Virus record (IMG/VR): IMGVR_UViG_3300037294_000266 | Location: 62,001 to 126,000 of that record | DNA: 64,000 nucleotides | Strand: one strand, 5' to 3' | Shown here: positions 3,431 to 61,539 of the stretch, one piece after another | How positions within the stretch are numbered: the stretch's first letter is position 1 | Layout: every line of letters begins with the position of its first letter | Notes under the pieces: model-generated | Database searches by the model: none | The model's input: the letters and a program-made list of their open reading frames with translations, nothing else | Told to the model about the DNA's origin: nothing | Translations under genes and position numbers: made by a program

Positions 3431-4612
3431 TTAGGCTTTGGTCACTACGTACGTTTTCATAATCCGACCGCCTTCATCACGATTAACAACCACCTCAGGG
3501 ATCCATACACGCTCACCACTGGCCAATGTTCTCCAGTGTGCAATACGGGTGTGTTCACGAGGCGCGGCGTGTGTATCGCCCTGCCACGGCGTCTTACCTG
3601 CCTTTGGTTTACCGATCACATAACGGACTATGTTGAAACCGTCAGCCAATGCCGCTGGCGGCACAGGTATCGATTCATTACCAGGACCACGATATTGATT
3701 AGTTGTCTCAACCCCTTCACTTTCAAGTGCCTTTATAAGTCCAACCAAAGTCAGTACGTTGGCTCGTATTTGCTCTCTAGAGATGGACTGGTCATCGACC
3801 TTCGATGTGATGTCGAGTGGTTCACCTTCGTGTTTAATGATAAGTCCGGTACCAATGACGTTAACGTCATCGACAGCATCAACGGTAGCAAACTCAATGA
3901 AGACTTCATGATCATTGAGTTTGCTAACCACCATCACCTGCGGCGTTTTATCATCGCCCATCTTTAACATGAACTTAACGTACGGTAGTTTGAGGTCTAT
4001 TGGATCGTTCTCAATAGATAACTCGTGGGTAAATAACTCAGGATCCATGATGAAGATCGTTGGAATTGCTGCTACCTGGTCAGCGAGAGTTTGTTCTTTT
4101 ACAGGCGGAGCTCCATTGACCAGATAGTCTACAATGGATCGCATCGCTCCTCGATACAGATCGTCTTGATCAGACCAGCCGTCGATAGTGGCAATGTAGG
4201 GTTCTGGAATAGAGGGGAACTCAGAACGAACTCCGGTACCGGCGATACGAATTTTCCCGCTGTCTTTCTCAAGGAACTGGAACATCACAGCGCCGCAGGT
4301 ATGTAGTCGCACTACAACCTCTTTCACAATACCGCCGATGTTTACTTTGAAGACAGTAACTTCGGTAAGGTTCACTCGCCCCTTAGGAACAGATTCTTCT
4401 AGGTCTTCACGAGCTGTGAAACTAATGTTCTTGAGACCGTTGAGTGTTTTACGCAAGACTCCGATCTTATCTTTGAGAATCAGACGAGCTTTACGCCGAT
4501 CCCATTTCATGAGAATGGCGTCGTTCTGCTGTTGCCGGCGACTGAATGCTTCTTCACGACTAAGACTAGCGCCGGTGTTAAGATGTACCCGTTCGTGTAA
4601 TTGAATTTCCAC
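3431..4612 (-). CDS. Hypothetical phage protein, 393 aa
   Basis: Start revised to GTG 4612 behind GGAGG (4617-4621). C-terminal PREHTRIAHWRTLASGERVWIP motif recurs in uncharacterised phage proteins. Confidence 0.75.
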   Translation of the reverse strand: MEIQLHERVHLNTGASLSREEAFSRRQQQNDAILMKWDRRKARLILKDKIGVLRKTLNGLKNISFTAREDLEESVPKGRVNLTEVTVFKVNIGGIVKEVVVRLHTCGAVMFQFLEKDSGKIRIAGTGVRSEFPSIPEPYIATIDGWSDQDDLYRGAMRSIVDYLVNGAPPVKEQTLADQVAAIPTIFIMDPELFTHELSIENDPIDLKLPYVKFMLKMGDDKTPQVMVVSKLNDHEVFIEFATVDAVDDVNVIGTGLIIKHEGEPLDITSKVDDQSISREQIRANVLTLVGLIKALESEGVETTNQYRGPGNESIPVPPAALADGFNIVRYVIGKPKAGKTPWQGDTHAAPREHTRIAHWRTLASGERVWIPEVVVNRDEGGRIMKTYVVTKA

Positions 4613-6313: not shown

Positions 6314-7027
6314 CTACTTACCGTCCTTTACAATGACCCACTTGTAAAAGCCGATGAATGAATTGATAGTGAACACTGTCCACATTACGACAATAGGCAT
6401 CGACCCTTCTCCATCAAGTGCAGGAAGCACCCACATGTAGATACAGAACAGATTGGCGGTTATCCAGAAGAACCACTGCTCAGCGTAATGTTTAACCATC
6501 AGCACAGTCCCAACTAGAGACAGTACGAGCATCGCTGCATCTGCGTAAGGATACGGATTGTCAGTATGGACTGCGAAATAATAGTGGACGATGCTGATGA
6601 AGAATACTGTCAGTCCACTGACTATAATCATCATACGACGAGTAAGAACATTGACTTTGACTTCGACGTCAAGACCATTAGACTCACCCATCGATTTATA
6701 CCACGTCCACCAGCCCCAGAACTGCGCACCAACGAACAATACGTTCAGAGATGCTGTACCGTACAACTTAGCATTGAACGCCACTACAGCCATGCCTACG
6801 ACGCCCACCATCCCCCAGTAGAAGTTGGACAAGCGACCCTTAGCGACTAACAGCACACAAACCACGTTAGCGATGGCCGTAACGATGTCGAGAGTGTTAC
6901 TTTCCATCAAGAGGGTGGACAGAATGATAGCGCCCACGGCTACTGCCAGCCACAGGCGATCCATGACACCCCAGCCTTTGAAGTCGCTCCAGATACTGTT
7001 CAGGCCTACTTGAATTGCTTCTTTCAT
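6314..7027 (-). CDS. pnuC: Nicotinamide riboside transporter PnuC
   Basis: Multi-TM protein with KGRLSNFYWG, GWWTW, PYADA and EQWFFWITAN motifs. Located next to nadR. Confidence 0.9.
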   Translation of the reverse strand: MKEAIQVGLNSIWSDFKGWGVMDRLWLAVAVGAIILSTLLMESNTLDIVTAIANVVCVLLVAKGRLSNFYWGMVGVVGMAVVAFNAKLYGTASLNVLFVGAQFWGWWTWYKSMGESNGLDVEVKVNVLTRRMMIIVSGLTVFFISIVHYYFAVHTDNPYPYADAAMLVLSLVGTVLMVKHYAEQWFFWITANLFCIYMWVLPALDGEGSMPIVVMWTVFTINSFIGFYKWVIVKDGK

Positions 7028-9939: not shown

Positions 9940-10003
9940 GTTATCACTCCTCGTCTATTCAATCGTATAATGTATCTTCAAAAGAAAATTCAGCGTAGGT
10001 AGA

Positions 10004-10027
10004 GTCAGAGGGATTTCTCCCTCTGAC
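10004..10027. terminator. Intergenic stem-loop
   Basis: GTCAGAGGGA-TTTC-TCCCTCTGAC. Confidence 0.7.
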
Positions 10028-10035
10028 ATGGCAGT

Positions 10036-10245
10036 TTACTTTGCTTTCAACTGTCGTTCGGCAAAGTCAAGAAACTTAAACCAACCGACTGCGACCATCG
10101 TAGTTACAAACAGAAATGCTTGAACCGAGATAAAACGCAACCATACCTTCACGTCGGCTGGTTCACTGGCACTTACTTCTACTTTAAAGTAGAGGATGGT
10201 GAACACAACGACCCAGATCAACAACAAAATAAATAGAATCAGCAT
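10036..10245 (-). CDS. Small two-TM membrane protein
   Basis: Two hydrophobic helices. GAGG SD before ATG 10245. Confidence 0.6.
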   Translation of the reverse strand: MLILFILLLIWVVVFTILYFKVEVSASEPADVKVWLRFISVQAFLFVTTMVAVGWFKFLDFAERQLKAK

Positions 10246-10262
10246 AACAGCCTCGTTATACA

Positions 10263-10288
10263 ACAGCCCTCCCATCAGGGAGGGCTGT
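10263..10288. terminator. Intergenic stem-loop
   Basis: ACAGCCCTCCC-ATCA-GGGAGGGCTGT. Confidence 0.7.
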
Positions 10289-10302
10289 ATTGTGCATGTT
10301 AA

Positions 10303-11182
10303 TTAACGAACTGCTTTGAGCGTACCGTTGATGCCACGGGCGATAGCGCGCTTGACTTCACGTGCTTGTTTCTTCTCGAGGCCGTCGGTGTAGGTTTCGT
10401 TGTAGACAACCGTGGCGTTCATGCAGTAGGTGTCAGGCTTACCCCCAGGTGCTGGTCTTGATGCCATTGGTCATCTTCTCAGTCAGTTCACATGTGTAGT
10501 ACAACGGATTACCTGCCAGGTCTTTGGTGTCACTGAACGAGGATTCGGCGATCTCACCAACCATCAACTTAGGACCGAAGTCAGTAGTGATGTCTTTGGT
10601 AATAAAACCAGGACGACCAACGTAAAGCATGCCAGCGATGTTAACGCGAACACCGGCCTTCATGGTGTAACCTTGAGCCACGGCTTCTGCCGCCAGGTAC
10701 CAGTCGTCAAATTCAACAGGGAGTACGTCCTTGTAGTCTTTGTCAACAGCGCGGAAGTTGTCAAGCGTTACTTCAGCACCCGAGCCGGAAACAATAGCAA
10801 CCTTCTTGCTGGAGTTTTCTTTAGAGGTCATGTCAGCGAAATCACTAACACCACCAGTACCGAAGATCCAGAAGACAGCTTCAACGTGTGCATTGGTGAC
10901 TGAGATACTGCGCGGCAGACCACGGGAGACAACAGCATCGCCCTGCATGATAGCCATGTAGCAGCTACCATCAGACATCAGCTCTGCGTTCTCGATAGAA
11001 CCGCCAGTGTTGATGACTTCCAGCTCACCACCGATCTTGCGAACAATGTCGCTACCGATTTGAGAACCCAGGGCCTCGTATGCACCACCTTCACCACCCG
11101 TACAGATAGTGAGTGGTTTCAGATCAGCCAATGCGACGTTCGCCATGAACATCGTGAATACAGCAAGCAACATCTTTTTCAT
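10303..11182 (-). CDS. TAXI/TRAP-type periplasmic solute-binding protein, with apparent frameshift near 10440
   Basis: Signal peptide, ICTGGEGGAY, TGGSIENAELM, AIMQGD. The frame stops at TGG GGG TAA (10439), but removing one G gives 46 more codons ending at TAA 10303, just before the hairpin. Confidence 0.75.
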
Positions 11183-15747: not shown

Positions 15748-16446
15748 TCAACCTACTTGTTCAAGAGAAGGCTGGTCGCAATGACCGACAGTGCCCACGT
15801 TAACAGGCATGCCCGCAGAAGCATAGGTCTTGCCGAAAACATTGTCCGTGTAGAACGGTTCACAGCGATACATGCGATCAACCGAATTGACACAATGGAT
15901 AGGGCGAACAAAACGAGCGAACTCGAAAGCCGTCAGATCGAATCGCTGTTGGATGGACAGGCGGTTATACGGCACGGGCGCTGGCACCGATGGCATGTTA
16001 CGCATGGCGATGTCCAACGTTTCAACCGCAGCGCAATCGTCTGGTAAATCCAGGGTGTCCAACCAATGCATTTCTCGGCAGCTCAGTTGAGTCACTGCAC
16101 GGTGCCGGTTCAATGCCGAGGAGATGTCATGAGGGGTGTGGAGCGAGATGAACATCAGATCGTTAGCTGACGTGTAAGCGCCTTCGTCCTTGCCACGTTC
16201 GGCGTCAACCGCAGCCATAGCCCGCCATAACGTGTTCCACGAGCCAGAAGGCCGGATGCGGAAGATCTTGACATGTTTGCCAGAGAGACCGACGGTCTTC
16301 TTGTTCAACTCACTCCCAGCAATCAGGAAGAACTCCTTAACGTTAGGGTTCTTCTCGATCACCTGAATAGCTTGTTCGTAGTCATTGACGAACACGATAG
16401 CGTGGCTCAGCAGTGACAGAGGGACTGTGCTATTAACATCTTTCAT
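15748..16446 (-). CDS. Hypothetical protein
   Basis: 232 aa, AGGA SD. Confidence 0.7.
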   Translation of the reverse strand: MKDVNSTVPLSLLSHAIVFVNDYEQAIQVIEKNPNVKEFFLIAGSELNKKTVGLSGKHVKIFRIRPSGSWNTLWRAMAAVDAERGKDEGAYTSANDLMFISLHTPHDISSALNRHRAVTQLSCREMHWLDTLDLPDDCAAVETLDIAMRNMPSVPAPVPYNRLSIQQRFDLTAFEFARFVRPIHCVNSVDRMYRCEPFYTDNVFGKTYASAGMPVNVGTVGHCDQPSLEQVG

Positions 16447-51059: not shown

Positions 51060-51977
51060 TTACGGCGTGTACTCAGATAGGCCATTGTTGACGCCAACTT
51101 CCGTGACTCCACCGAAAACATACATTTTGTTACCGTAAACCACAGCTGCCATTGAATGGTGGGTATTTGGACCGGCTGGTTTATCTACTATATCCCATGC
51201 ATTCGTAACGGGATCGTATACGTAGATAATAGTGGCAGTTACAGAGCCGCCTCCATAAACATATAACTTACCGTTTATCGAAAAGGCGGTGTGGTACTGT
51301 AGGGCGTTTGGCATGCCTGCTAAATCGGTCCATTTATTCGTGAGTGGATCATACATGGACAATCCGTACACGACGCTTCCCGTACTATTTCGACCACCGG
51401 TCACGTACATCTTATCACCGACTACCGCAGCGGCATGGTAACGACGTGGAGTACTTGAGGCGAGAGCCTTCCAAGTGTCGGTAGCGGGGGTGTATTCGTA
51501 CAGCGATCCTAATGCGTTGCCGGCATTACCAGCACCGCCGTAAACATATAACTTACCGTTGATAGCCACTGCGGAATGAGATTGTACTCCTACCGGGTAC
51601 GGGTTCTTAGTAGTCCAGGTATCCGATGATGGGTCGTAGACATCAAGACCGTTGGAAGTGCCGTATCCGTTATAACCGCCGAGAACATAAATCTTGTTAT
51701 TGATTGTACAGGCGGTGTGACGTATTCTTTTTAAAGCTGACTTTCTTCCACGCCACGTACCGTTAAGAAAATTGTATTCATAATGTAAATCTAGGACGGG
51801 TCCATTCACTGTACTCGACCCTCCGTAAACGTAGATACAATCTTCGGAAACGGCTGCTGAATACCAATGACTTTTAAATGACGTTGGAGCACTGCTTTTA
51901 GATATCCATGTACTAATCGCAACCGATAACTTACTTCGTTCAAAAGCGTGAGCTGCAGGTAATAGACTGGCTAACAT
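51060..51977 (-). CDS. Kelch-repeat beta-propeller protein
   Basis: Six repeats of the form H-x-A-x-x-x-N-G-K-I/L-Y-V-x-GG...Y-D-P-x-T-x-x-W. Confidence 0.92.
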   Translation of the reverse strand: MLASLLPAAHAFERSKLSVAISTWISKSSAPTSFKSHWYSAAVSEDCIYVYGGSSTVNGPVLDLHYEYNFLNGTWRGRKSALKRIRHTACTINNKIYVLGGYNGYGTSNGLDVYDPSSDTWTTKNPYPVGVQSHSAVAINGKLYVYGGAGNAGNALGSLYEYTPATDTWKALASSTPRRYHAAAVVGDKMYVTGGRNSTGSVVYGLSMYDPLTNKWTDLAGMPNALQYHTAFSINGKLYVYGGGSVTATIIYVYDPVTNAWDIVDKPAGPNTHHSMAAVVYGNKMYVFGGVTEVGVNNGLSEYTP

Positions 51978-53061: not shown

Positions 53062-53296
53062 GACGATATCCTTTATATTGCGACAATGAAATCATTGTCG
53101 AGGCGGCATAACACCCTACTGGATTTCTCCAGTAGGGTGACAGAGGCTTATTTCGGTTACTGCTTCAACCGTGTCACGTGCTGCGGCGGGTATTGCAACC
53201 AGATCGTACAACAGTCCATCAGGATATTACACATCGAACCATTCCCAGGATGAACCTCCAGGACGGCTAGCCTCTCCATGGTGCGGTGAGGGCGTG

Positions 53297-53512: not shown

Positions 53513-53543
53513 GGGTATACTCCAGTTGATAAATCATCCACAC

Positions 53544-53612
53544 AAGCGGAACCTAAGCTCACACCAAGCCCGAAGGCTATTACAGACAGTGCAATGCGTT
53601 CATATACCGCTT
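53544..53612 (-). ncRNA. Small multibranch structured element with cUUCGg tetraloop
   Basis: Closing stem AAGCGG/CCGCTT, internal ATTGCA/TGTAAT and AGCC-TTCG-GGCT. Confidence 0.4.
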
Positions 53613-53661
53613 CCTACCTTTGATCCCAGCACGTTAGGGAGGCAGCACTAAAATAGTCTTT

Positions 53662-53810
53662 TGGTTCGTGTCGCGATGATATTAGATTCCATAGGCCGGT
53701 CGTAATGAGAGAGACTCTCGTTACTCCTTACTAAGCAGACAGACAGTTTCTCAGGCTGTTCCGTCTACGTTTCTCATCTTGAGCCTCGCCGTTGAGTACG
53801 GCTCTCGGAA
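53662..53810 (-). ncRNA. Three-hairpin structured element ending in CCA
   Basis: GCCGT/ACGGC, AGAC..ACAG/CTGT..GTCT, GTAA-GAGAG/CTCTC-TTAC. The 3' end reads GAACCA. Confidence 0.4.
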
Positions 53811-53812
53811 AT

Positions 53813-53995
53813 TGGCGGGAAATTGAGGATTTGAACCCCCTTCTCCAGACGTCTTTTCTTACCGTTCGGATTCCTGATTAACCCACTGGTCAGGTGGGAT
53901 TTCGCTTGGCCTCAGAACCACCTGAGACGAGCTACTGCCCTATGCACCGATAAGAGTACCGCCTGTCGCATTAAACATGTCTATGCTAAGATCCC
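53813..53995 (-). ncRNA. 183-nt tRNA-like RNA with pseudoknot-containing domain replacing the anticodon arm
   Basis: Acceptor GGGA/TCCC with G-CCA end, D-stem GCAT/ATGC, T-loop TTCAAAT, extended stem CAGGCG/CGTCTG and TCTTATCG/CGGTAAGA, pseudoknot CCCAC/GTGGG with CCTGA/TCAGG. The first G is the G of a TATG motif. Confidence 0.7.
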
Positions 53996-54005
53996 ATAAC
54001 TGTTA

Positions 54006-54194
54006 TCAAAGACTGCTCAAGTAATTATCTCGTCTTTCGACGAACGCCTGATGGGTCTTTGATGTCTTAACCATTTCGTTGATAACAAAGGTAATGTCGT
54101 CAACTGCATCCTTACCCTGCTCTTTGAACACGCGATCGAGAATAGCATCGCGCTGAGCTAAGGTAAGTCGTTTGTGTGTTTCAATGGGTATCAT
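54006..54194 (-). CDS. Hypothetical protein
   Basis: 62 aa, GAGG SD. Confidence 0.6.
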   Translation of the reverse strand: MIPIETHKRLTLAQRDAILDRVFKEQGKDAVDDITFVINEMVKTSKTHQAFVERRDNYLSSL

Positions 54195-54206
54195 GCTAAC
54201 CTCTAG

Positions 54207-54653
54207 TTAAAGGCCGCACCAACCAACTTTAGTGCCGCCAGAATAAGGGACTGCGAGTCCTCGAGCAATAAGCTCATCTCCAACGACTCTGCCGTCTACG
54301 ACCACAGTGGCCAGTAAGCGAAAGTACTTATCACGATCGAGGTTGGTCAGTGTCACTCGTTTACCATTGGCAATCATTTCACCGACAGCGTCACGAGCTT
54401 TTATGGCCAGTATTTTCTCTGCATCACGTTCAGCCTTTGTGGCACAGTCACTCCGCATCTCTGGTGTATCGATGCCATTTACTCTGACTGACAACCGATC
54501 TCCAAAGACATCAGGCAGGTACGGAATCTGGACAGTGAGTGTGTCACCATCGTAGATACTGACAACGTCCTCAGGAATGAGTTTTATCTCTTCAAGAGGA
54601 TACGCTTGAACGGTGCCACATGCCAGCAGAAAACTAAGAAGTAAAATACGCAT
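54207..54653 (-). CDS. Secreted thermonuclease (SNase family)
   Basis: Signal peptide, YDGDT, VRVNGIDTPE, DKYFRLLA, LIARGLA. Confidence 0.9.
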   Translation of the reverse strand: MRILLLSFLLACGTVQAYPLEEIKLIPEDVVSIYDGDTLTVQIPYLPDVFGDRLSVRVNGIDTPEMRSDCATKAERDAEKILAIKARDAVGEMIANGKRVTLTNLDRDKYFRLLATVVVDGRVVGDELIARGLAVPYSGGTKVGWCGL

Positions 54654-54797
54654 GATGACTCCAGGTCAATGACAGTTAATTCATAGTCATTGACCTGTAA
54701 AGGGGTGAGTGATGAGTTTACCAAACTAGGTGGTCACCCGCGCAACGGAGACCTCATCAACTCGATCAACACTGTCCATGGCAGGACAGAGTTAAAA

Positions 54798-54885
54798 TGG
54801 CGGAAGCGGTGAGATTCGAACTCACGGACCCCGAAGAGTCGACAGTTTTCAAGACTGTAGGATTCAACCGCTCTCCCACGCTTCC
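54798..54885 (-). tRNA. trnS: tRNA-Ser(UGA)
   Basis: Complete type II cloverleaf GGAAGCG...ACAGTCT-TGA-AAACTGT...long variable arm...GTTCGAATC...CGCTTCC-G-CCA. Confidence 0.97.
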
Positions 54886-54890
54886 AATAC

Positions 54891-54963
54891 AGGTGCTGAT
54901 ACCGGGAATCGAACCCGAGTCCTCCGTCACCAACAGGTGCGCCTTCTCTGCGCCACTATCTAC
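54891..54963 (-). ncRNA. Degenerate tRNA-like element (intact T-arm, weak anticodon arm, ACCT end)
   Basis: D-stem GCGC/GCGC, T-arm TCGGG-TTCGATT-CCCGG, acceptor 6/7 bp. Confidence 0.6.
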
Positions 54964-54965
54964 CA

Positions 54966-55039
54966 AGTAGATAGACAGGACTTTAACCTGCGACCTCCTG
55001 TCTCGTTTACCGGGACACTACCAGCTGAGCTATAACGGC
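54966..55039 (-). ncRNA. Degenerate tRNA-like element with non-matching acceptor strands
   Basis: TAGCTCAGCTGGTAG D-region, T-arm GCAGG-TTAAAGT-CCTGT. Its 3' strand CTATCTAC pairs with the next element rather than its own 5' end. Confidence 0.55.
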
Positions 55040-55044
55040 GAAAT

Positions 55045-55133
55045 AGGCGGAGAGCCACCTTAGACTTCCTGATGTGCCCGACGGGAGAGCACGGAAGTAA
55101 CGGGTTAGATTAGCACCCTCCAAGGGGCTCTCC
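55045..55133 (-). ncRNA. Y-shaped RNA with long acceptor-like stem and G-CCT tail
   Basis: GGAGAGCC/GGCTCTCC plus CCTTGG/CTAAGG, hairpins GGGT/ACCC and ACTTCC-GTGC/GCAC-GGAAGT. Confidence 0.55.
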
Positions 55134-55137
55134 TGTT

Positions 55138-55258
55138 TGGTCCAAGTATCCGGGTTCGAACCGGTGGAGTATAACATCCGATCGACGTGCGACCATAGTC
55201 GCGTTCGTCATCAGACATCACTCCCAGAGCCACCTCCCAAACCCGATCATAATCTTGG
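55138..55258 (-). ncRNA. 121-nt tRNA-like RNA with long irregular stem replacing the anticodon arm
   Basis: Acceptor CCAAG/CTTGG with A-CCA end, T-arm CCGG-TTCGAAC-CCGG, about 24-bp interrupted stem capped by GCGAC-TATG-GTCGC. Confidence 0.7.
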
Positions 55259-55440
55259 GACTAAGGCCGAATTACACGGCGAGCACGGATCTCTGTACTT
55301 GTACACTAGGCGCGAGCGTTTACGACCATCGAGTTCTTTTGCTTCCGAACGCTAAAGGTAAGGGGCCTCGACGTCATCTACTCGCATTAATCGGTTCTCT
55401 CACTGCGGATCTCTACATATATCAGCAGTGTTAATATTTT

Positions 55441-56691
55441 TTAATTGGTTATTACAGTACACCCACGGCTTATTAAAGTGTTTTTAGACGCTATACCGTT
55501 TGCAGAAGGTGCAGCGCTGGTTCCAGTTATTGTAATGTTTTCATTAGTAAATAACGTGGTCCCATTAGTTCCGTCTAATGAAGCAAATTGTGCAAGAAGA
55601 GCATCGACAGAAACAGCTGATAGTGGACAGTTGATATAAACCGATCCATTGACTTCTTTTAAACTATTGCTTAATTTAAATATAGTGAGTCCAGTCAGCG
55701 TAGGCCCGAGACTTATAGCATTGCCGTCAGTTAGGTTACAGCCTATTTTCTCTAACGAACTAAAGGTTAAATTTGTTATAGCTGGTGCTGTTGAAATACT
55801 TAGCCTTCCTTTAATTTGAGTTAAATTAGGAAGACTGACGGTTGTACATGCAGCCAATTCGTTTATACTGAAATTACCTTCTACAGTGGTCAAGCCGGCA
55901 AAGTTAACCGTGGTGCACCCAGCTAAGGTGTTTAACGAAAAGTTACCGTATACCGTAATCAATGAAGGGACGGAGATTATTGCAAAGGCTACATTACTTG
56001 CTATGTTAAAATTACCAACCACCACAGTCAATAGCGGACAAGATAAACTTGTTAGACCAGCCAGGTTAGAGGTAGAGAAACCACCCATTACAACCTTTAA
56101 CTCTGGAAAATTAAGAAAGGATAATGCAACCAATCCACTAATCGACAAGGTCCCTGTAAGGCCTTGTAAATTACTGAACGTTAAAGTCGTTATATCCACG
56201 TTAGCACTTGGAACGACTAACGTGGAAGCCCAAATGCCTGAATAGTCCGGAGTCACAACACTATTTATAGCGGTCGGGGGAGGTGTCAGGATAGCTGTAA
56301 TTGGTTCAGCCACCACTCCTACTGTTGAATAATCTAAAATAAATAAAGTACCGATTGGTGTACCGCCTAAACTAAACCAATCATCCCCATTAAATCCTTC
56401 GAACCATGTGAAATCGGTATTAAACCTAAAATGTCCGCCCTCGGTTACAATGGGGCGGTTTAGTGTAGAACCTACTGAAAACCATTTAACTAAAAAGTCT
56501 AATTTAATTTTATCATCAGACGACATAAAACCGTTTTCTAAAAGGTTTACAATGGCGTGAGCGAGACTTCCAGATTCAAGATGACTTAATAGTGCTGGAG
56601 GTATCAGATCTTGCTTTTTATCAACCCTGGCTATGAGACGTGTCATCAATTTGTTAAATTCTTTTACCATTGTTTCGATGACAGTTGTCAT
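55441..56691 (-). CDS. AT-rich L-domain/LRR-like beta-solenoid protein (possible tail appendage or receptor-binding protein)
   Basis: About 23-aa repeats (F/L-P-x-L-x-x-V-x-G-x-F-x-I), C-cap AAPSANGIASKNTLISRGCTVITN. Start revised to 56691. Confidence 0.75.
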   Translation of the reverse strand: MTTVIETMVKEFNKLMTRLIARVDKKQDLIPPALLSHLESGSLAHAIVNLLENGFMSSDDKIKLDFLVKWFSVGSTLNRPIVTEGGHFRFNTDFTWFEGFNGDDWFSLGGTPIGTLFILDYSTVGVVAEPITAILTPPPTAINSVVTPDYSGIWASTLVVPSANVDITTLTFSNLQGLTGTLSISGLVALSFLNFPELKVVMGGFSTSNLAGLTSLSCPLLTVVVGNFNIASNVAFAIISVPSLITVYGNFSLNTLAGCTTVNFAGLTTVEGNFSINELAACTTVSLPNLTQIKGRLSISTAPAITNLTFSSLEKIGCNLTDGNAISLGPTLTGLTIFKLSNSLKEVNGSVYINCPLSAVSVDALLAQFASLDGTNGTTLFTNENITITGTSAAPSANGIASKNTLISRGCTVITN

Positions 56692-56721
56692 ATATAAATT
56701 TCCTGTGCTCATTTTGTGGAT

Positions 56722-56763
56722 GTAACATCCGATCAGAGTAATGGTACTCTGATCGGATGTTAC
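56722..56763. terminator. 19-bp perfect stem-loop
   Basis: GTAACATCCGATCAGAGTA-ATGG-TACTCTGATCGGATGTTAC. Confidence 0.7.
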
Positions 56764-56820
56764 GTCGAGCGCGGATCTTTATACGAGTCATGTCATCTAC
56801 TCACATTGACTTTATAGCCT

Positions 56821-57090
56821 TTAACAGCCTAATGAGCAGATCTCTTCGTTACCTACAACTATCTTGACCAAAGGTCGCTCTCCAGACGCATCGAGCTTTA
56901 CGTCGATGTCGTATTCATGGAAACCAGCCTTCTGGTCTTCGAGGGCTTCGTTCATTGCATGACGAGTGCGTTCATCAATAAGGACATCGCCAGTCTCCGA
57001 TAATGCATGGAGGGTGGCTCTTACTCTTAGAACTACCGCATCTACAATGGACTTGTCTGCGGGACGGTAGATATCAAGCTTCTTACTCAT
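56821..57090 (-). CDS. Hypothetical protein
   Basis: 89 aa, GAGG SD. Confidence 0.65.
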   Translation of the reverse strand: MSKKLDIYRPADKSIVDAVVLRVRATLHALSETGDVLIDERTRHAMNEALEDQKAGFHEYDIDVKLDASGERPLVKIVVGNEEICSLGC

Positions 57091-57250
57091 ACCACTTCCT
57101 CAGACATAAATAACTACACGTTAGCTTCCATTGACCCACAGGCTTTTTCCGTCATCCAGGATCTCTCCTACACTGACGCCTATCCACAGGATTCACCTTA
57201 CGAGGGTTACTTTGGTTTGTGCTGTCATCGCTCGCGTGTATCGCAGTGCA

Positions 57251-57397
57251 CTACGATTCTTTACCGAATATCCTATCCATTGCCAGACGAAGTCTTTCTT
57301 CATCTTCTGGGGTAGGAGTAGGAAGGGGCTTTCCAGGGCAGGCGTGAATGCCACAGATATTACATATCGGACAACACTGCCTTTCGTCTTCTAACAT
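57251..57397 (-). CDS. Small Cys-rich protein (48 aa)
   Basis: MLEDERQCCPICNICGIHAC. The SD GGGGG is supplied by the 3' acceptor strand of the upstream tRNA-like element. Confidence 0.5.
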   Translation of the reverse strand: MLEDERQCCPICNICGIHACPGKPLPTPTPEDEERLRLAMDRIFGKES

Positions 57398-57491
57398 GAT
57401 ACCCCCTACAGGATTCGAACCCATGCTCGCGCAGTATCCGAATGCGAATTTGGACACTACCCAGCTCTAACCAACTGAGACTTAAAGAGGC
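57397..57491 (-). ncRNA. tRNA-like RNA with 7-bp anticodon stem and 12-nt loop
   Basis: Acceptor GCCTCTT/AGGGGGT, CTCAGTTGGTTAGAG D-arm, AGTGTCC/GGATACT, T-loop TTCGAAT, A-TCA end. Confidence 0.65.
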
Positions 57492-57504
57492 TTAACAGAA
57501 ATCG

Positions 57505-57825
57505 TGGGTTGATGACCTGAAGCGGTCTTAGATGTTTTCACATCACCCGTCAACCTACTGGGCTTGCCGTTACCATTTCGCCCGAATGGTCAAGGGGATC
57601 TGTCATACGCTTCTAGATCTTGGGCAGGGCGGTGACTAAACAGTTCTATTGTTCAGACACATCCTTCTCGGGGTGCGGCTTTGGACTTCCCTGATCGCAC
57701 GTCTCCAATAGACTAGAGGATGCGGTCGTAGGGTTTCAGATAAGAGATCAGACTGTGCAGTCCGGTGCCTAGGTGAGTAGGGCACTGTCTTGATCAATCA
57801 TTCCCCAGCTGGTTGAGGGGGAATT
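57505..57825 (-). ncRNA. Run of structured non-coding elements
   Basis: GGTTGA/TCAACC junction with GATGT-GAAA-ACATC and GACC/GGTC, plus ACCATT/AATGGT, GTGCC/GGCAC, GACTG/CAGTC and ATTCCCC/GGGGAAT. No ORF of 60 aa or more in the track. Confidence 0.5.
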
Positions 57826-57828
57826 AAA

Positions 57829-57910
57829 CACCTCTAGCGAGTCTCGAAGTCGCACACCGTCGATTAGAATGGCTACCAATCGACTGTCCTACCAATTGGA
57901 CGATAGAGGT
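57829..57910 (-). ncRNA. tRNA-like RNA with 7-bp anticodon stem and 12-nt loop
   Basis: Perfect acceptor ACCTCTA/TAGAGGT, D-arm GTCC-AATTGGTA-GGAC, GTCGATT/AATCGAC, T-loop TTCGAGA. No encoded CCA. Confidence 0.75.
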
Positions 57911-57924
57911 ATAAACGCTGTATG

Positions 57925-58050
57925 TAAGTATGATGGGATTCAAACCCACGTACGCTTTGGTATAGCCAATGGACTGGCACCTCGGCGTTCTAGTCCAACC
58001 GTCCGCGTTACCGGACATTTCACCCTTAAGCCAGGCTCAGGAACATACTC
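57925..58050 (-). ncRNA. 126-nt tRNA-like RNA with three hairpins between the D- and T-arms
   Basis: Acceptor GAGTATG/CATACTT, D-stem CCT/AGG, hairpins GTCC/GGAC, GGACT/AGTCC and TTGG/CCAA, T-arm GTGGG-TTTGAAT-CCCAT. Confidence 0.7.
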
Positions 58051-58060
58051 ACACACAAAC

Positions 58061-58148
58061 AGGTGGCAGCCGACCGAGTTCCCCCGATCCGATCCAGTAT
58101 GGGTTCGAAAACGCACTAAGGCAATCGACGTACTGAACTTAAGCTACC
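58061..58148 (-). ncRNA. Degenerate tRNA-like element (acceptor, long arm, T-like arm, ACCT end)
   Basis: GGTAGCT/GGCTGCC, TTCAGTA/TACTGGA, GATCG/CGGTC. Confidence 0.5.
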
Positions 58149-58157
58149 ATTGTAACG

Positions 58158-58270
58158 TCGAGAACGCGGGCCGGCGCCGCGTATGGCTGCCTCATTGGGC
58201 TGCCGATCATAGTGCGCGCTGCCACTAGGGCTGCCGCTGATCCGGTGCGGAGACGAACCCGCGTTCTCGA
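58158..58270. ncRNA. Multibranch hairpin with 13-bp closing stem and four GGCAGC motifs
   Basis: TCGAGAACGCGGG/CCCGCGTTCTCGA. GCTGCC on the + strand at 58186, 58199, 58218 and 58230. Confidence 0.65.
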
Positions 58271-58321
58271 ACTCTTACACGATTGTTAATCGTGATTAAA
58301 ATGGCGATTTGGCGTAATTAT

Positions 58322-58858
58322 TTAAGCTGTCGTATAGCGTTTACCGGAGTGTATGTTCTCTACAACACCCCTACTAATTCCAAACATTCTGGCTATTTCA
58401 CGCTGAGAATGTTTACCCTTTAATGAGAGAACTCTATTCGCCTCTTCTTGAGTAAGAACAGCATTATGACTATCGGCTCCGCGACGTTGTTTCAATAAAC
58501 CATTTTCTTTTGCATGGTCCATATTACCTTGCCGAGTAGTCCACTCTAATTGAGTGTAACCATTTTTGGCTTTATCGCAGAAAACATGATTGACTTCAAG
58601 ATCATCACTTTCTCTTCCAACAAAGGCTTTGGCAACCTGTACATGGATTTTTATACAGATGTTCTTACCCTTCCTACCACCTATTTTACTAGCATGGGTC
58701 AGGTAGCCATTATGATTCAATGTCTGAGACAGTATTTTACCTGTCCTGCGACTTCTCAAGGTGCCTTTCGAACCAATATCAAAGTGTTCTGGATAATCCG
58801 GACACGGAACAAATATTTCATCTTCGTCGTCAAGTGTCCAGCCAACTAATTTACTCAT
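58322..58858 (-). CDS. Free-standing NUMOD4-HNH homing endonuclease with C-terminal HTH
   Basis: IGSKGTLRS, IHVQVAKAF, EVNHVFCDKAKN...LEWTTRQGNMDHA, SQREIARMFGISRG. Start at 58858 with GGAGG. Confidence 0.85.
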   Translation of the reverse strand: MSKLVGWTLDDEDEIFVPCPDYPEHFDIGSKGTLRSRRTGKILSQTLNHNGYLTHASKIGGRKGKNICIKIHVQVAKAFVGRESDDLEVNHVFCDKAKNGYTQLEWTTRQGNMDHAKENGLLKQRRGADSHNAVLTQEEANRVLSLKGKHSQREIARMFGISRGVVENIHSGKRYTTA

Positions 58859-58865
58859 GTTGACC

Positions 58866-58889
58866 TCCATCTGTTTATTGTCAGATGGA
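58866..58889 (-). promoter_or_regulatory. Hairpin occluding the HNH ribosome-binding site
   Basis: TCCATCTG-ACAATAAA-CAGATGGA overlaps GGAGG, with TACATTA immediately upstream. Confidence 0.6.
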
Positions 58890-58912
58890 TAATGTATGAT
58901 CTAAAGAAAAGG

Positions 58913-58949
58913 AACAGCCAGCTACTCTACCTGTCTGAGCTATCATGGA
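58913..58949 (-). pseudogene. 5' half of tRNA-Asn(GUU), truncated right after the anticodon
   Basis: TCCATGA-TA-GCTC-AGACAGGTA-GAGT-A-GCTGG-CT-GTT, then unrelated HNH leader sequence. No matching 3' half (CCAGC...TCATGGA) found. Confidence 0.75.
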
Positions 58950-58957
58950 ATTAAATT

Positions 58958-59203
58958 GTGTAGCGCTGAGGACTTTCACCTCTCCTTTTCATGTCAGAGT
59001 TTAGTCGGACACGGAACACAACGCCACCTATGTTCAGAGTAATCGCCTGTCAGGACGGAATCCACCTTCATGGTGCGCGATGCGCACCATTGCTGACAGA
59101 CTATTGCTACAACGGAACGGAGACCAGTCCTATTCAGAACCGATAAGACAGCCGTGAAGAAGTCTCGTCCGTTCTGCCTTTGCAGCAAATTCTTCTAGGC
59201 ATA
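58958..59203 (-). ncRNA. Long-hairpin structured element(s) plus decayed tRNA-like tail
   Basis: TTGCTGCA/TGTAGCAA-closed hairpin, GTCTGTCAG/CTGACAGGC enclosing ATGGTGCGC/GCGCACCAT, T-like GAGG-TGAAAGT-CCTC. TATG at 59200-59203. Confidence 0.5.
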
Positions 59204-59223
59204 CAATACAGAGAATCAGTTAT

Positions 59224-59382: not shown

Positions 59383-59537
59383 GACCGATACCTCACGATG
59401 GGTACATTCTCCTCATCTGCACCTAGGACACGTGCCATTCTGGACGGGCTAGGATACAGATGAGGGGCTATCATCGCATCCAACATGGGACGCAAGTGTT
59501 TCACATATTGTACGCTAACAATGTTATTTTTTACAAG

Positions 59538-59969
59538 TCATTGTTCTTGGTTCAACACGTCGACAACCGAACCGAGCATATGAGCTGTCTTCAGATCAAT
59601 GATACCGCGCTGGAAGGATGAGTTGGCATGGTCGTGCCGATAACCCTCAATGGAGCTCAACACGGTACATAGCGTGTAAGAACGAATACGTCCTTCTCCA
59701 CACTGAATGTAGATCGCTTCCGCACCTGCCTTACGCTGTTCTTCACAGAACGCAACGAGCTGTTCACCTTTATCCTTAGTGAACAGTCGCTCTGCAGCTA
59801 CGTCGTTATGGAAGTGATCGCCTGGAAAGAAGCTAAGGCGAAGGACAGGACGGTTGGCTTCGTTAGGTATTTCGATATGGCTGGAGTAGACATCACCAAT
59901 ACTTACGATAGGGACATCCTTAGGAATGTCCTTTATGCGGTCTTTGCCGACATTGAGTAAACGGGTCAT
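59538..59969 (-). CDS. Protein-tyrosine/dual-specificity phosphatase-like protein
   Basis: IVSIGD...LRLSF...IYIQCGEGRIRS (CX5R P-loop). Confidence 0.7.
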   Translation of the reverse strand: MTRLLNVGKDRIKDIPKDVPIVSIGDVYSSHIEIPNEANRPVLRLSFFPGDHFHNDVAAERLFTKDKGEQLVAFCEEQRKAGAEAIYIQCGEGRIRSYTLCTVLSSIEGYRHDHANSSFQRGIIDLKTAHMLGSVVDVLNQEQ

Positions 59970-61090
59970 TCGTTTTCTTCCTTTACAGGGATGGGGATGT
60001 ACCATTCCGCATCGGGGAATAGTCCGTTCATGTACACTTCAACAGCATCTTTGACAGTGTTGAGGATGGATATTGGGAGTTGTCGTTCGCTTACATTCAC
60101 TCCATGAAGTTCGATGGTCTCAAACGTCAAGGGTGTTTTGTCACGCGCCCAGGAGTTCTTCATCTTCAATTCATTCATACGCTCCCAACTATTCCAGTCG
60201 GTATCGTTCGTAGAAATGGAGACGTGACCACCATCGAATTTAATCTGTCTGCCGTAGCCAGAACGAGAACGGTCGTTGAAATGATACATGCCTTTATTAA
60301 GGGCCGCAATCACTCGATCAGAATGGACTTTGCCAGCAGCGATCTCGAGCAGTGCGGATGGAGAGAACGAGCGACGTGATTGGTTATGCGCCGAGCTTAG
60401 TATGGTATCGACAGTTTCATCAACCATCAATTCTTCAGCCAGTACATCGAGGACGCTTTGGGCGAGGTACTTGTTAGTAAGGGACACGAACGCGTCTTCG
60501 ACATGATGGCAGAGATGTGCTGAATGGTATTGGAAATTGTTGTTATAAAGCGCATGACTGCGTTCGATCGATCCGGTAAGATCCCACCAACACTCTGGAG
60601 TATAGATGCGGTAACTGACCTTATCGATATATGACATACCTTCACTGGAAGAGGATTTAGGAGTCAATTCAATGTCGATGATCAACGACCCAGAATGAAT
60701 GACCTTTATCATCTTGCCATCAGTATCAAAGTCACCCGTCGGCCATAGCTTCATTAACATCTGACTCCATCGGCACATGGCGTAGATCAGATGTTCTTCA
60801 TCGATGACAGGGAGGACTTTAACAGCTAGGTTGTCAAGATTACCTTCGACGGTTTGGCCGAGGTATTTACACGCATTACGCAAAGCCGTTGACTGGATGC
60901 CACGACCGCTCAAAATAGTACCTTCATGACTAGTGGTAATCATGCCGATGTTCGCCATGGCGTTGTCAGCGATCTGGCGGAATTCATTTCTCACCATCTC
61001 CGGCAACGCGGCGTTGTTAGACAACTGACTGAGACCAGATGCAATCATATCCAAAGTCTGTCTGATGTGAAGCATGTTCATAGTGTCCAT
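59966..61090 (-). CDS. Hypothetical protein
   Basis: 374 aa after start revision. Confidence 0.7.
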   Translation of the reverse strand: MDTMNMLHIRQTLDMIASGLSQLSNNAALPEMVRNEFRQIADNAMANIGMITTSHEGTILSGRGIQSTALRNACKYLGQTVEGNLDNLAVKVLPVIDEEHLIYAMCRWSQMLMKLWPTGDFDTDGKMIKVIHSGSLIIDIELTPKSSSSEGMSYIDKVSYRIYTPECWWDLTGSIERSHALYNNNFQYHSAHLCHHVEDAFVSLTNKYLAQSVLDVLAEELMVDETVDTILSSAHNQSRRSFSPSALLEIAAGKVHSDRVIAALNKGMYHFNDRSRSGYGRQIKFDGGHVSISTNDTDWNSWERMNELKMKNSWARDKTPLTFETIELHGVNVSERQLPISILNTVKDAVEVYMNGLFPDAEWYIPIPVKEENE

Positions 61091-61095
61091 ACGAA

Positions 61096-61539
61096 CTATC
61101 TCTTCTGTAAGACGGTGATAAACCGTCGATCGTGGTAAGGGAAGATGGCTTTGTAAACCAGACTGATGTCTTTGTCCCAACTAAGACCGCCATTGCCACA
61201 ACCCATAGGGGGTAGGGCGATTGTTCCCATCTGAGGATGACGATTGGCAAGTACGGCCAATCGATTGATGTTGTGGATAACTAAGCCCCGTGGAGACTTT
61301 TGCTTCCAGTCTAATTTGGTAGGTATGAGGAGATAAAGTACTCCATCATGCTTGTACGTGATAAACTGTCCCGGTTCGATCGTCGAGTACATCTTCTTGT
61401 AATGTTTGTAGAGCCCTGGAATGTTATCACGGGCTGATTTTGCCACGCCGGCGCCCATTGCCCCTACAAGGTTAATTGTGATGACTTTAGTATCTGCTTT
61501 GACGGACAGGATGTCGTTGTATTCGAACTCTAGAGACAT
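61096..61539 (-). CDS. DarG/OARD1-like macro domain protein
   Basis: INLVGAMGAGVA, IPTKLDWKQKS, TIALPPMGCGNGGLSW. Confidence 0.8.
   Translation of the reverse strand: MSLEFEYNDILSVKADTKVITINLVGAMGAGVAKSARDNIPGLYKHYKKMYSTIEPGQFITYKHDGVLYLLIPTKLDWKQKSPRGLVIHNINRLAVLANRHPQMGTIALPPMGCGNGGLSWDKDISLVYKAIFPYHDRRFITVLQKR

What the first reader, a model, noticed from the sequence alone, without database searches (positions are those of the whole stretch)
53540..59205. Array of anticodon-less tRNA mimics and structured ncRNAs: candidate undescribed RNA system
In 5.7 kb there is one normal tRNA but at least eight elements that keep acceptor and T-arm (often D-arm) pairing, while the anticodon arm is remodelled differently in each. 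There are also about seven other folded elements. All are co-oriented. Pairing is preserved with many G.U and compensatory-looking pairs while arms have grown, which argues against simple decay. These would be elbow and acceptor substrates for RNase P, CCA-adding enzyme, synthetases and EF-Tu but cannot decode normally. Hypotheses (inference): decoys for tRNA-targeting defences (PrrC, RloC, PARIS AriB, VapC, GNAT toxins), ribosome or stringent-response modulators, or tRNA scaffolds that stabilise cargo RNA domains.
Basis: partly seen in the sequence, partly recalled or inferred. Interest (0 to 1): 0.9.

Follow-up and report, generated by a model that had tools for sequence, protein, structure and literature searches.

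The report
Phage tRNA operon full of tRNA-like RNAs
A giant phage's tRNA gene cluster holds one working tRNA, some freshly broken tRNA genes, and many conserved folded RNAs of no known family, including a new "double tRNA" fold. Several use a tRNA frame whose anticodon end is replaced by other RNA, so they cannot decode.

Summary
The window is a phiKZ-like jumbo phage contig, and 53.1-59.2 kb is its expanded tRNA operon. Only tRNA-Ser(UGA) is a normal tRNA. Three kinds of element lie around it.

1. Recent debris. An HNH homing-endonuclease gene has replaced the 3' half of tRNA-Asn. A 206-nt deletion fused the start of tRNA-Thr(UGU) to the next RNA. A ~97%-identical strain still has both tRNAs intact.

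2. Conserved, covarying tRNA-frame RNAs whose anticodon end carries other RNA. The clearest is a "twin", a domain-swapped double tRNA-like RNA found in four related phages: 41 pairs, 27 with compensatory changes, 98.8% paired. E5, domain A and E0 also belong here.

3. Conserved non-tRNA folds: E1, B85, EX, UP, domains B and C, and a terminal element.

None of these elements matches another Rfam family above threshold. Apart from tRNA-Ser, the two stretches compared with GenBank phages (53.5-55.4 and 57.4-58.1 kb) found nothing.

E2, E3 and E4 are lineage-specific. They may be relics.

Best reading: tRNA-scaffolded, non-decoding stable RNAs made through the tRNA-processing route, mixed with recombination debris. 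No RNA data exist, so expression, ends and function are inferred.

The parts
58958..59215 (-). 5' structured block. It includes a 68-nt mini tRNA-like element at 58960-59027: a 7-bp closing stem and a hairpin in the T-arm position with loop UGAAAGU.
   Evidence: Folds (mini element z = -2.4). 76% conserved in metagenome contig L007.
58913..58948 (-). Remnant 5' half of tRNA-Asn(GUU), running to anticodon position 36.
   Evidence: The strain variant L011 has the intact tRNA-Asn at 6629-6705 (65 bits). In the window the 3' half is replaced by 607 nt.
58322..58870 (-). HNH/NUMOD4 homing-endonuclease gene (182 aa), inserted at the anticodon loop of tRNA-Asn.
   Evidence: Pfam NUMOD4 at 1.2e-7 and a weak HNH_3 match. 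Absent from the variant strain.
58159..58271 (-). E1: a 113-nt RNA closed by a 13-bp stem, with repeated GGCAGCC motifs. Not tRNA-like.
   Evidence: z = -4.2. Six homologous copies in five phages have unrelated outer-stem sequences.
58062..58148 (-). E0: a three-way RNA with a 7-bp acceptor-like closing stem, followed by ACC. A conserved 7-bp hairpin sits in the T-arm position.
   Evidence: Folds in five phages. The closing stem covaries: GGUAGCU/GGCUGCC in the window against GACAGCU/GGCUGUC in DT01.
57926..58050 (-). E2: a 125-nt tRNA-like element with acceptor, D arm, T arm, a hairpin with a 6-nt loop in the anticodon position, and a large extra arm. Lineage-specific.
   Evidence: z is only -1.05. 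No homolog found. Replaced in the variant strain.
57829..57910 (-). E3: a tRNA-like element with a 7-9 bp anticodon stem and an 8-12 nt loop. Lineage-specific.
   Evidence: Rfam tRNA 41.5 bits with an 11-nt excess in the loop. Fold z = -2.4. Replaced in the variant strain.
57401..57491 (-). E4: a tRNA-like element with a 9-bp anticodon stem and a 12-nt loop. Its 3' acceptor strand, AGGGGG, doubles as the ribosome-binding site of the next small ORF.
   Evidence: z = -2.3. Present in the variant strain with one U.G to C-G change in the acceptor stem. Not found elsewhere.
57100..57250 (-). EX: a conserved structured element lying between two small ORFs that form one fused gene in a relative.
   Evidence: Conserved core in four phages; 16 pairs, 5 compensatory. 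The ORFs are fused in L008 14694-15203.
55307..55388 (-). UP: a conserved element with invariant single-stranded motifs UAGAUG, CGGAAGCAAAA and GUAAAC.
   Evidence: 74% identity to L008 15614-15699. Alifold gives 20 pairs.
55138..55302 (-). E5: a 125-165 nt tRNA-frame RNA with a covarying acceptor stem and T arm and a large internal domain.
   Evidence: Acceptor CAAGUA/UACUUG in the window, CAAGCG/CGCUUG in L008, CAAGUG/CGCUUG in L015. 28 pairs, 10 compensatory.
55049..55133 (-). B85: an 85-nt three-way RNA, nearly identical across divergent phages.
   Evidence: z = -4.95. 87% identity to L008. 29 pairs, 4 compensatory.
54892..55039 (-). 5'-damaged copy of the twin (a domain-swapped double tRNA-like RNA). 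It is fused at 55024/55025 to the first 15 nt of tRNA-Thr(UGU). It contains ARAGORN's 'tRNA-Thr(ggt)' at 54892-54963.
   Evidence: The variant has 206 extra nt at this point, with an intact tRNA-Thr(UGU) and an intact twin. Twin structure.
54798..54885 (-). tRNA-Ser(UGA), the only normal tRNA.
54699..54782 (-). Conserved 84-nt noncoding block. In L008 it runs straight on into domain A.
   Evidence: 86% identity to L008 17071-17154.
54006..54653 (-). Inserted genes: a staphylococcal-nuclease-like protein with an N-terminal signal-like sequence (148 aa) and a 62-aa ORF. They split the conserved noncoding block.
   Evidence: Pfam SNase at 3.3e-8. The flanking blocks are contiguous in L008.
53813..53996 (-). 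Domain A: a 184-nt tRNA-frame RNA. It has a 5' GGGA.../...UCCC-G-CCA 3' acceptor, a D-arm-like hairpin, a canonical T loop UUCAAAU, and about 120 nt of branched RNA in the anticodon position.
   Evidence: Alifold consensus with compensatory pairs. It occurs as a discrete module ending at the CCA in L015.
53687..53810 (-). Domain B: a conserved branched RNA.
53533..53680 (-). Domain C: a conserved branched RNA ending just before the Lar-like ORF.
53106..53271 (-). Terminal element (E-term), the most widely conserved RNA of the cluster.
   Evidence: Present in six phages; 45 pairs, 21 compensatory.

Best explanation
The 53.1-59.2 kb stretch is the phage's tRNA operon, enlarged into a co-oriented array of stable noncoding RNAs.

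Several of these RNAs keep the parts of a tRNA that the cell's tRNA-processing enzymes recognise: a 7-bp acceptor stem, the D and T arms that form the elbow, and often an NCC(A) tail. In the anticodon position they carry unrelated RNA. The insert is 9-13 extra nt in E3 and E4, large branched domains in E5 and domain A, and a whole second, circularly permuted tRNA-like domain in the twin.

Inferred mechanism: the array is transcribed together with the tRNAs. RNase P and the 3'-trimming and CCA-adding enzymes cut each tRNA-frame RNA out and protect it. The insert then does the work, which is unknown. They almost certainly cannot decode.

Shown: the sequences, the folds, their conservation and covariation, and the absence of a normal anticodon loop.
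Inferred: expression, processing, stability and any function.

Mixed in is plain debris from gene turnover: the tRNA-Asn half beside the HNH gene, and the tRNA-Thr fragment fused to a damaged twin. E2-E4 may be debris too.
For: - Synteny places the array at the tRNA cluster of relatives: DT01 has tRNA-Asp and Asn there, and L006, L008, L015 and L018 have 2-5 tRNAs.
- Twin: RNAfold gives the same nested fold independently in three phages. L008 against L006 gives 41 pairs, 11 compensatory, none broken. Four copies give 98.8% of cells paired and 27 of 41 pairs with changes on both sides, against 37-46% paired when partners are slid.
- Tandem cloverleaves are impossible in L008 and L006. D-loop position 19 and T-loop position 56 covary in the swapped partnership: G/C, A/A or U/U.
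- Ordinary tRNAs align to the outer frame of the twin model.
- E5: 10 compensatory pairs, including acceptor and T arm.
- Domains A-C together: 133 pairs, 10 compensatory among three sequences. Domain A ends in GCCA and is a self-contained module in L015.
- In relative L018 a 109-nt tRNA (50 bits) carries a ~35-nt insert in the anticodon loop.
- Noncoding blocks are 84-99% identical between phages whose neighbouring protein is 69% identical.
- No element matches another Rfam family above threshold.
Against: - No RNA run holds this sequence, so transcripts, ends and stability are unknown.
- E2-E4 have no homolog in relatives or in 50,697 GenBank phages. E2 and E3 are replaced in a near-identical strain.
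- This genome's own twin is 5'-damaged, so it is not essential here.
- 'Stem followed by NCC' and the CCACCU motif are not enriched over chance.
- Folding z-scores of the tRNA-likes are modest.
- E1, B85, EX and the terminal element have no tRNA frame, so the scaffold idea covers only part of the array.
- The alignment used was fitted to the model, which favours the structure.
Confidence: 0.5

Rival explanations
1. The tRNA-like elements are only decaying tRNA pseudogenes and recombination debris, in a tRNA cluster churned by homing endonucleases. They have no function.
For: - Debris is demonstrably present. The HNH gene replaced the 3' half of tRNA-Asn, and a D-loop to D-loop deletion of 206 nt removed most of tRNA-Thr(UGU).
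- L008 carries a tRNA-Asp 5'-half remnant.
- E2-E4 are lineage-specific and the E2/E3 cassette is swapped between strains.
Against: - The twin, E5, E0, domain A, B85, E1 and the terminal element are conserved across divergent phages, with many compensatory changes and almost no broken pairs.
- Their noncoding identity exceeds that of neighbouring proteins.
- E3 and E4 keep every arm paired.
Confidence: 0.2
2. The tRNA-frame RNAs are decoys or sponges. They soak up host factors that recognise the tRNA acceptor end or elbow, such as defence toxins that modify or cut tRNA ends, RNase P, the CCA-adding enzyme or EF-Tu. This would protect the phage's translation.
For: Acceptor, D and T modules are preserved while the decoding part is lost. 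The twin offers two elbows on one rigid RNA. That phages use tRNA genes against tRNA-targeting defences is general background knowledge, not a tool result.
Against: - There is no defence or anti-defence gene context.
- Anticodon nucleases need an anticodon loop, which these RNAs lack.
- The large conserved inserts (domain A, E5) are not explained by a decoy role.
- There are no binding or expression data.
Confidence: 0.15
3. The twin and its relatives are bacterial Y-RNA-like (YrlA-type) RNAs that work with a Ro60/TROVE protein.
For: The inner half of the twin has the YrlA order: T arm, closed acceptor hairpin, D arm. Rfam gives a weak YrlA match of 21.3 bits. YrlA RNAs are known in 22 phages (PMC4201824).
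Against: - The score is far below the gathering score of 69.
- The YrlA authors warn that tandem tRNAs give false positives.
- Where YrlA has a Ro-binding stem, the twin has a second tRNA-like frame.
- The 20 window proteins scanned with Pfam include no TROVE protein.
[quoted passage not shown] Placing this phiKZ-like phage in that group is my inference.
Confidence: 0.04
4. The elements act in cis on the neighbouring mRNAs. They would be processing punctuation, 5'-UTR regulators or transcript stabilisers rather than free RNAs.
For: E4's 3' strand is the ribosome-binding site of the next ORF, and domain C ends just before the Lar-like ORF. EX sits between two ORFs that are fused in a relative.
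Against: Most conserved elements adjoin tRNAs or each other, not ORFs. Their neighbouring genes differ between phages.
Confidence: 0.1
5. E3, E4 and similar elements are real tRNAs with short inserts at position 37/38 that are removed before use.
For: Removing 9 nt from E3 or 13 nt from E4 leaves canonical 7-nt loops with U33 and A37, giving anticodons GGU and CCA. The inserts pair with the anticodon as eukaryotic tRNA introns do (read from the sequence).
Against: There is no bulge-helix-bulge motif and no group I intron match. No splicing enzyme is known in this context. The coincidence is not statistically strong, and there is no conservation.
Confidence: 0.03

Closest known systems
Stable RNAs of the phage T4 tRNA operon (species 1 and 2; from my own knowledge)
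   Same: Small stable RNAs of unknown function, encoded among phage tRNA genes, co-transcribed with them and cut out by the tRNA-processing machinery. The region is also home to homing-endonuclease genes.
   Different: No sequence relation. Here there are many more elements, several far larger, and the twin architecture has no T4 counterpart that I know of.
YrlA, the bacterial Y RNA-like family (Rfam RF02553; PMC4201824)
   Same: A tRNA-like domain with T arm, closed acceptor hairpin and D arm in permuted order. The inner half of the twin has exactly this order.
   Different: 21.3 bits against a gathering score of 69. No Ro60 gene nearby. The Ro-binding stem is replaced by a second, normally ordered tRNA frame.
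tRNA (Rfam RF00005)
   Same: Acceptor stem, D arm, T arm, elbow nucleotides and often an NCCA tail.
   Different: No 5-bp stem with a 7-nt anticodon loop. Most elements score below threshold.
Engineered 'tRNA scaffold' for expressing recombinant RNA in bacteria (from my own knowledge)
   Same: Cargo RNA replaces the anticodon stem-loop. The tRNA frame gives processing and stability.
   Different: That is a laboratory design. Here the arrangement is natural and conserved.
tRNA-like RNAs of murine gammaherpesvirus 68 (TMERs; PMC4337559 listed, paper not read here; details from my own knowledge)
   Same: A viral array of non-decoding tRNA-like RNAs whose tRNA part drives processing of attached RNA.
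   Different: An animal virus with RNA polymerase III transcription and microRNA cargo attached after the tRNA, not placed inside the anticodon arm.
Circularly permuted tRNA genes of algae and archaea (PMC3978253 listed, paper not read here; details from my own knowledge)
   Same: The 3' half precedes the 5' half, as in the inner domain of the twin.
   Different: Those mature through a bulge-helix-bulge splice into a normal tRNA. Here there is no such motif, and the permuted unit is nested in another tRNA frame.
Homing endonucleases in the tRNA regions of phages T4 and T5 (from my own knowledge)
   Same: Free-standing HNH-type genes that invade and disrupt tRNA clusters.
   Different: This explains only the debris, not the conserved RNAs.

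Membership tests
tRNA (RF00005) | Score at or above the Rfam gathering score of 29 bits | tested here: not met
   Met only by tRNA-Ser (53.9 bits) and E3 (41.5 bits). E2, E4, E5, the twin halves and domain A gave no tRNA hit even at E up to 10.
tRNA (RF00005) | 5-bp anticodon stem closing a 7-nt loop with U33 | tested here: not met
   E3 has a 7-9 bp stem with an 8-12 nt loop. E4 has a 9-bp stem with a 12-nt loop. E2 has a 6-nt loop. The twin, E5 and domain A have large inserts.
tRNA (RF00005) | 7-bp acceptor stem with adjoining T arm and a D arm | tested here: met
   Covariation is shown for the twin, E5 and E0.
YrlA / Y RNA-like (RF02553) | Score at or above the gathering score of 69 bits | tested here: not met
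   21.3 bits, E = 0.57, on L011 10214-10282.
YrlA / Y RNA-like (RF02553) | Encoded within about 4 kb of a Ro60/TROVE gene on the same strand (PMC4201824) | tested here: not met
   No TROVE hit among the 20 proteins of the cluster and its flanks that were scanned. The rest of the 266-kb genome was not tested.
YrlA / Y RNA-like (RF02553) | Ends form a Ro-binding stem carrying the GNCGAAN0-1G motif | tested here: not met
   The ends form a tRNA acceptor stem instead. Only a partial motif, GACGAG, is seen in L006.
tmRNA (RF00023) | tRNA-like ends plus an internal tag reading frame, detected by ARAGORN or Rfam | tested here: not met
   ARAGORN finds none at default settings. Rfam gives only a 15.4-bit T-arm fragment. 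Permuted tmRNA calls appear only at an 80% threshold and away from domain A.
Group I intron in a tRNA gene | Match to the group I intron model within or beside the interrupted tRNA | tested here: not met
   No hit at E up to 10. The variant shows that the HNH gene replaced the tRNA-Asn 3' half rather than sitting in an intron.

The most novel reading that the evidence does not exclude
These jumbo phages use a natural tRNA-scaffold system. A family of RNAs, including a domain-swapped double tRNA-like fold not described before, is cut out by the tRNA-processing enzymes. Their conserved cargo domains act on host or phage machinery, for example in counter-defence or in control of translation.
Probability: 0.25. 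Interest if true: 0.85.

Novelty: new variant of a known kind. Interest (0 to 1): 0.68.

Why it matters
Phage tRNA clusters are usually read as codon-usage or anti-defence tRNA sets, and the spacers are ignored. Here the spacers hold at least eight conserved, covarying RNA folds with no Rfam family. One is an architecture I could not find described: two tRNA-like domains formed by strand exchange between two tandem tRNA-like units.

If these RNAs are expressed, they would be a natural counterpart of the laboratory tRNA scaffold. They would also be a new class of viral tRNA mimics in bacteria. The cultured relative DT01, which infects Pseudomonas aeruginosa, carries E0, E1, the terminal element and one tRNA-like RNA, so the question can be tested at the bench.

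The strain comparison also catches a homing endonuclease and a deletion in the act of destroying tRNA genes.

Tried and rejected
- Near and distant BLAST of the region against 50,697 GenBank phages matched only tRNA-Ser.
- Rfam at permissive thresholds, on the window and on five relatives, gave only tRNAs plus noise: snoRNA and miRNA hits, a 15-bit tmRNA fragment and a 21-bit YrlA match.
- tmRNA, group I intron and Y RNA readings were rejected (see the membership tests).
- Relaxed ARAGORN adds calls only when its threshold is lowered: E3 as an odd or intron-containing tRNA at 90% (with one further intron call), and many implausible ones at 80%.
- The idea that a closing stem followed by NCC(U), or the CCACCU motif, marks processing sites failed. 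Neither is enriched over shuffles or over expectation.
- Sigma-70 promoter and intrinsic terminator scans show no excess. These phages use their own RNA polymerases, so this says little.
- The direct-repeat search shows the elements are not copies of each other.
- MAFFT misaligned the twin copies and the outer stems of E1. I used a covariance model for the twin instead. For E1 the outer stems were compared by eye.
- A search for RNA sequencing runs listed none. Only DNA contigs could be laid on the region.
- Two scans of bacterial and archaeal genomes for two motifs found nothing.
- Pfam on 20 neighbouring proteins found nothing tied to tRNA metabolism.

Full report
**Origin and setting.** The window is identical to IMG/VR contig IMGVR_UViG_3300037294_000266, which is 266.6 kb long. 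DNA runs place it in a salt-lake metagenome. Its proteins match phiKZ-like jumbo-phage families: split DNA polymerase, internal head proteins and virion proteins. The nearest cultured relative is Pseudomonas phage pPa_SNUABM_DT01, with a DNA polymerase 81% identical. By synteny, window 53.27-59.22 kb corresponds to the 1.1-kb tRNA cluster of DT01 (tRNA-Asp and Asn). So the finding sits in a much enlarged tRNA operon. Everything is on the minus strand.

**Relatives used.**
- D: DT01, locus L001.
- M: L006, IMG/VR.
- R: L008, a 247-kb metagenome contig.
- N: L015.
- Q: L018.
- V: L011, a ~97%-identical strain from a sediment metagenome.

The flanking baseplate-hub-like protein is 67-69% identical between the window and D, M and R.

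**Checking the observation.** ARAGORN and Rfam agree on one normal tRNA, Ser(UGA), at 54798-54885. Rfam also scores E3 (57829-57910) at 41.5 bits with an oversized anticodon loop. ARAGORN's 'Thr(ggt)' at 54892-54963 gets no Rfam tRNA call. Canonical T-arm motifs cluster at 57949, 57424, 55165, 54918, 54825 and 53840 on this strand. Folding and acceptor searches define about eight tRNA-like elements and about as many other folds. The elements are not duplicates of each other. Folding z-scores are strong for E1 (-4.2) and B85 (-4.95). They are modest for the tRNA-likes (-1.05 to -2.4), as they are for the real tRNA-Ser (-1.3).

**Debris, shown by the strain comparison.** Laying DNA contigs on the region gave three differences in strain V.
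- 58305-58913, which holds the HNH/NUMOD4 gene, is replaced in V by 36 nt. These complete a perfect tRNA-Asn(GUU), found in V at 6629-6705 with 65 bits. The window therefore keeps only the 5' half, at 58913-58948.
- V has 206 extra nt at 55024. They contain an intact tRNA-Thr(UGU), in V at 9969-10046 with 67 bits, and the true 5' end of the next RNA. The window has a deletion between two similar D-loops.
- 57820-58061, which holds E2 and E3, is replaced in V by a different 243 nt containing another tRNA-like element.

R also carries a tRNA-Asp 5'-half remnant. In R the noncoding block is continuous. In the window the SNase-like gene and the 62-aa ORF interrupt it.

**The twin.** V 10175-10321, R 15928-16093, M 16114-16262 and Q 3461-3608 share one architecture. 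In order, it runs:
- outer acceptor strand
- D arm 1
- a central helix that encloses T arm 1, a closed inner acceptor hairpin and D arm 2
- T arm 2
- outer acceptor strand
- ACC

RNAfold finds this fold independently in V, R and M. R against M gives 41 pairs, 11 compensatory and none broken. A covariance model built from R and M finds Q at 138 bits and V at 44.7 bits. On the four-copy alignment, 98.8% of cells pair and 27 of 41 pairs change on both sides. Controls with slid partners pair only 37-46% of cells. That alignment is fitted to the model, which favours the structure.

Two ordinary tandem cloverleaves cannot form in R or M. The elbow positions covary in the exchanged partnership: D-loop 19 with T-loop 56 is G/C, A/A or U/U. 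The RNA is therefore two tandem tRNA-like units that have exchanged strands. Seen another way, it is a tRNA frame whose anticodon loop is replaced by a permuted tRNA-like domain. Ordinary tRNAs align to its outer frame. The window's copy (54892-55039; 28 bits) has lost its own 5' strand.

**Other tRNA-frame RNAs.**
- E5 (55138-55302): the acceptor and T arm covary between the window, R and N; 28 pairs, 10 compensatory.
- Domain A (53813-53996): a GGGA/UCCC acceptor followed by GCCA, a D-arm-like hairpin and a canonical T loop. About 120 nt of branched RNA occupy the anticodon position. Compensatory pairs support it, and in N it is a module on its own.
- E0 (58062-58148): a covarying 7-bp closing stem followed by ACC, present in five phages.
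- Q carries a 109-nt tRNA (50 bits) with a ~35-nt insert in the anticodon loop.
- D carries an unannotated tRNA-like RNA with a perfect acceptor stem and an abnormal anticodon arm.

**Non-tRNA folds.**
- E1: six copies, with outer stems of unrelated sequence and repeated GGCAGCC motifs.
- B85: 4 compensatory pairs.
- EX: 5 compensatory pairs.
- UP: 20 pairs.
- Domains B and C.
- The terminal element at 53106-53271: six phages, 45 pairs, 21 compensatory.

**Lineage-specific elements.** E2, E3 and E4 have no detectable homolog in the relatives or in GenBank phages. E3 and E4 keep all arms paired and lengthen the anticodon stem to 9 bp. Removing 9 or 13 nt would restore canonical loops, but nothing supports splicing. 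Their status is open.

**Interpretation.** The anatomy fits natural tRNA scaffolds carrying cargo RNA, mixed with debris from homing-endonuclease and recombination turnover. Expression, processing and function are inferred. No RNA run was listed. The apparent NCC tail and CCACCU motif are not enriched over chance. Neighbouring proteins give no functional hint.

**Literature.** Searches found YrlA tRNA mimicry and its warning about tandem-tRNA false positives. They found TROVE proteins reported only in other jumbo-phage groups, and phiKZ noncoding RNAs that are unrelated to these. No description of a double tRNA-like RNA turned up.

Noticed in passing
window 58305-58913 (minus strand): An HNH/NUMOD4 homing-endonuclease gene has replaced the 3' half of tRNA-Asn(GUU) from the anticodon loop onward. 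A ~97%-identical strain has the intact tRNA and no HNH gene.
   Followed up: yes
window 55024/55025: A 206-nt deletion between two similar D-loops removed most of tRNA-Thr(UGU) and the 5' strand of the twin RNA. The strain variant L011 9969-10175 shows the undeleted state.
   Followed up: yes
window 54207-54653 (minus strand): A staphylococcal-nuclease-like protein with a hydrophobic N-terminal signal-like sequence, plus a 62-aa ORF, is inserted into a noncoding block that is continuous in L008. L015 has the nuclease next to an HNH gene at a different place.
   Followed up: partly
window 57251-57394 and 56821-57090; L008 14694-15203: Two small ORFs (one a zinc-ribbon-like peptide, the other 89 aa) are separate genes here with the EX RNA between them. 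In L008 they form one 169-aa ORF.
   Followed up: partly
window 59490-59540; L006 14561-14612: A conserved AT-rich motif (GTAAAAAATAACA ... TATGTGRAA) lies upstream of the cluster in two phages. It may be a phage-polymerase promoter for the operon.
   Followed up: no
window 55441-56712 (minus strand): A 423-aa protein with repeats resembling leucine-rich or receptor-L-domain repeats (Pfam below threshold) sits in the middle of the RNA array.
   Followed up: no
window 61096-61539 and 59538-60005: A weak Macro-domain match (E = 4.6e-4, below cut-off) lies next to a protein whose DT01 homolog is annotated as a tyrosine-phosphatase-like protein. This could hint at RNA-end chemistry, but the evidence is thin.
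   Followed up: no
window 51060-51977: A Kelch-repeat beta-propeller protein (Pfam 1e-50), unusual for a phage. The strain variant has a longer version.
   Followed up: no
window 55373-55388 and 56792-56807: The motif AATGYGAGTAGATGAC occurs twice, at the start of UP and again before the 89-aa ORF. Its meaning is unknown.
   Followed up: no
window 57500-57820 (minus strand): About 320 nt of noncoding sequence between E3 and E4 folds into several hairpins. Only a 27-nt stretch is shared with L015. It remains unassigned.
   Followed up: partly
L008 13750-13810: A tRNA-Asp 5'-half remnant joined to the 3' end of an E1-like element. This is further evidence of recombination between elements of the cluster.
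   Followed up: partly
L008 16181-16306; L015 1397-1530: Another ~125-nt tRNA-frame RNA in relatives, with acceptor ACCGUGU/GCACGGU followed by ACCA in L008 (ACCC in L015). It has no counterpart in the window.
   Followed up: partly
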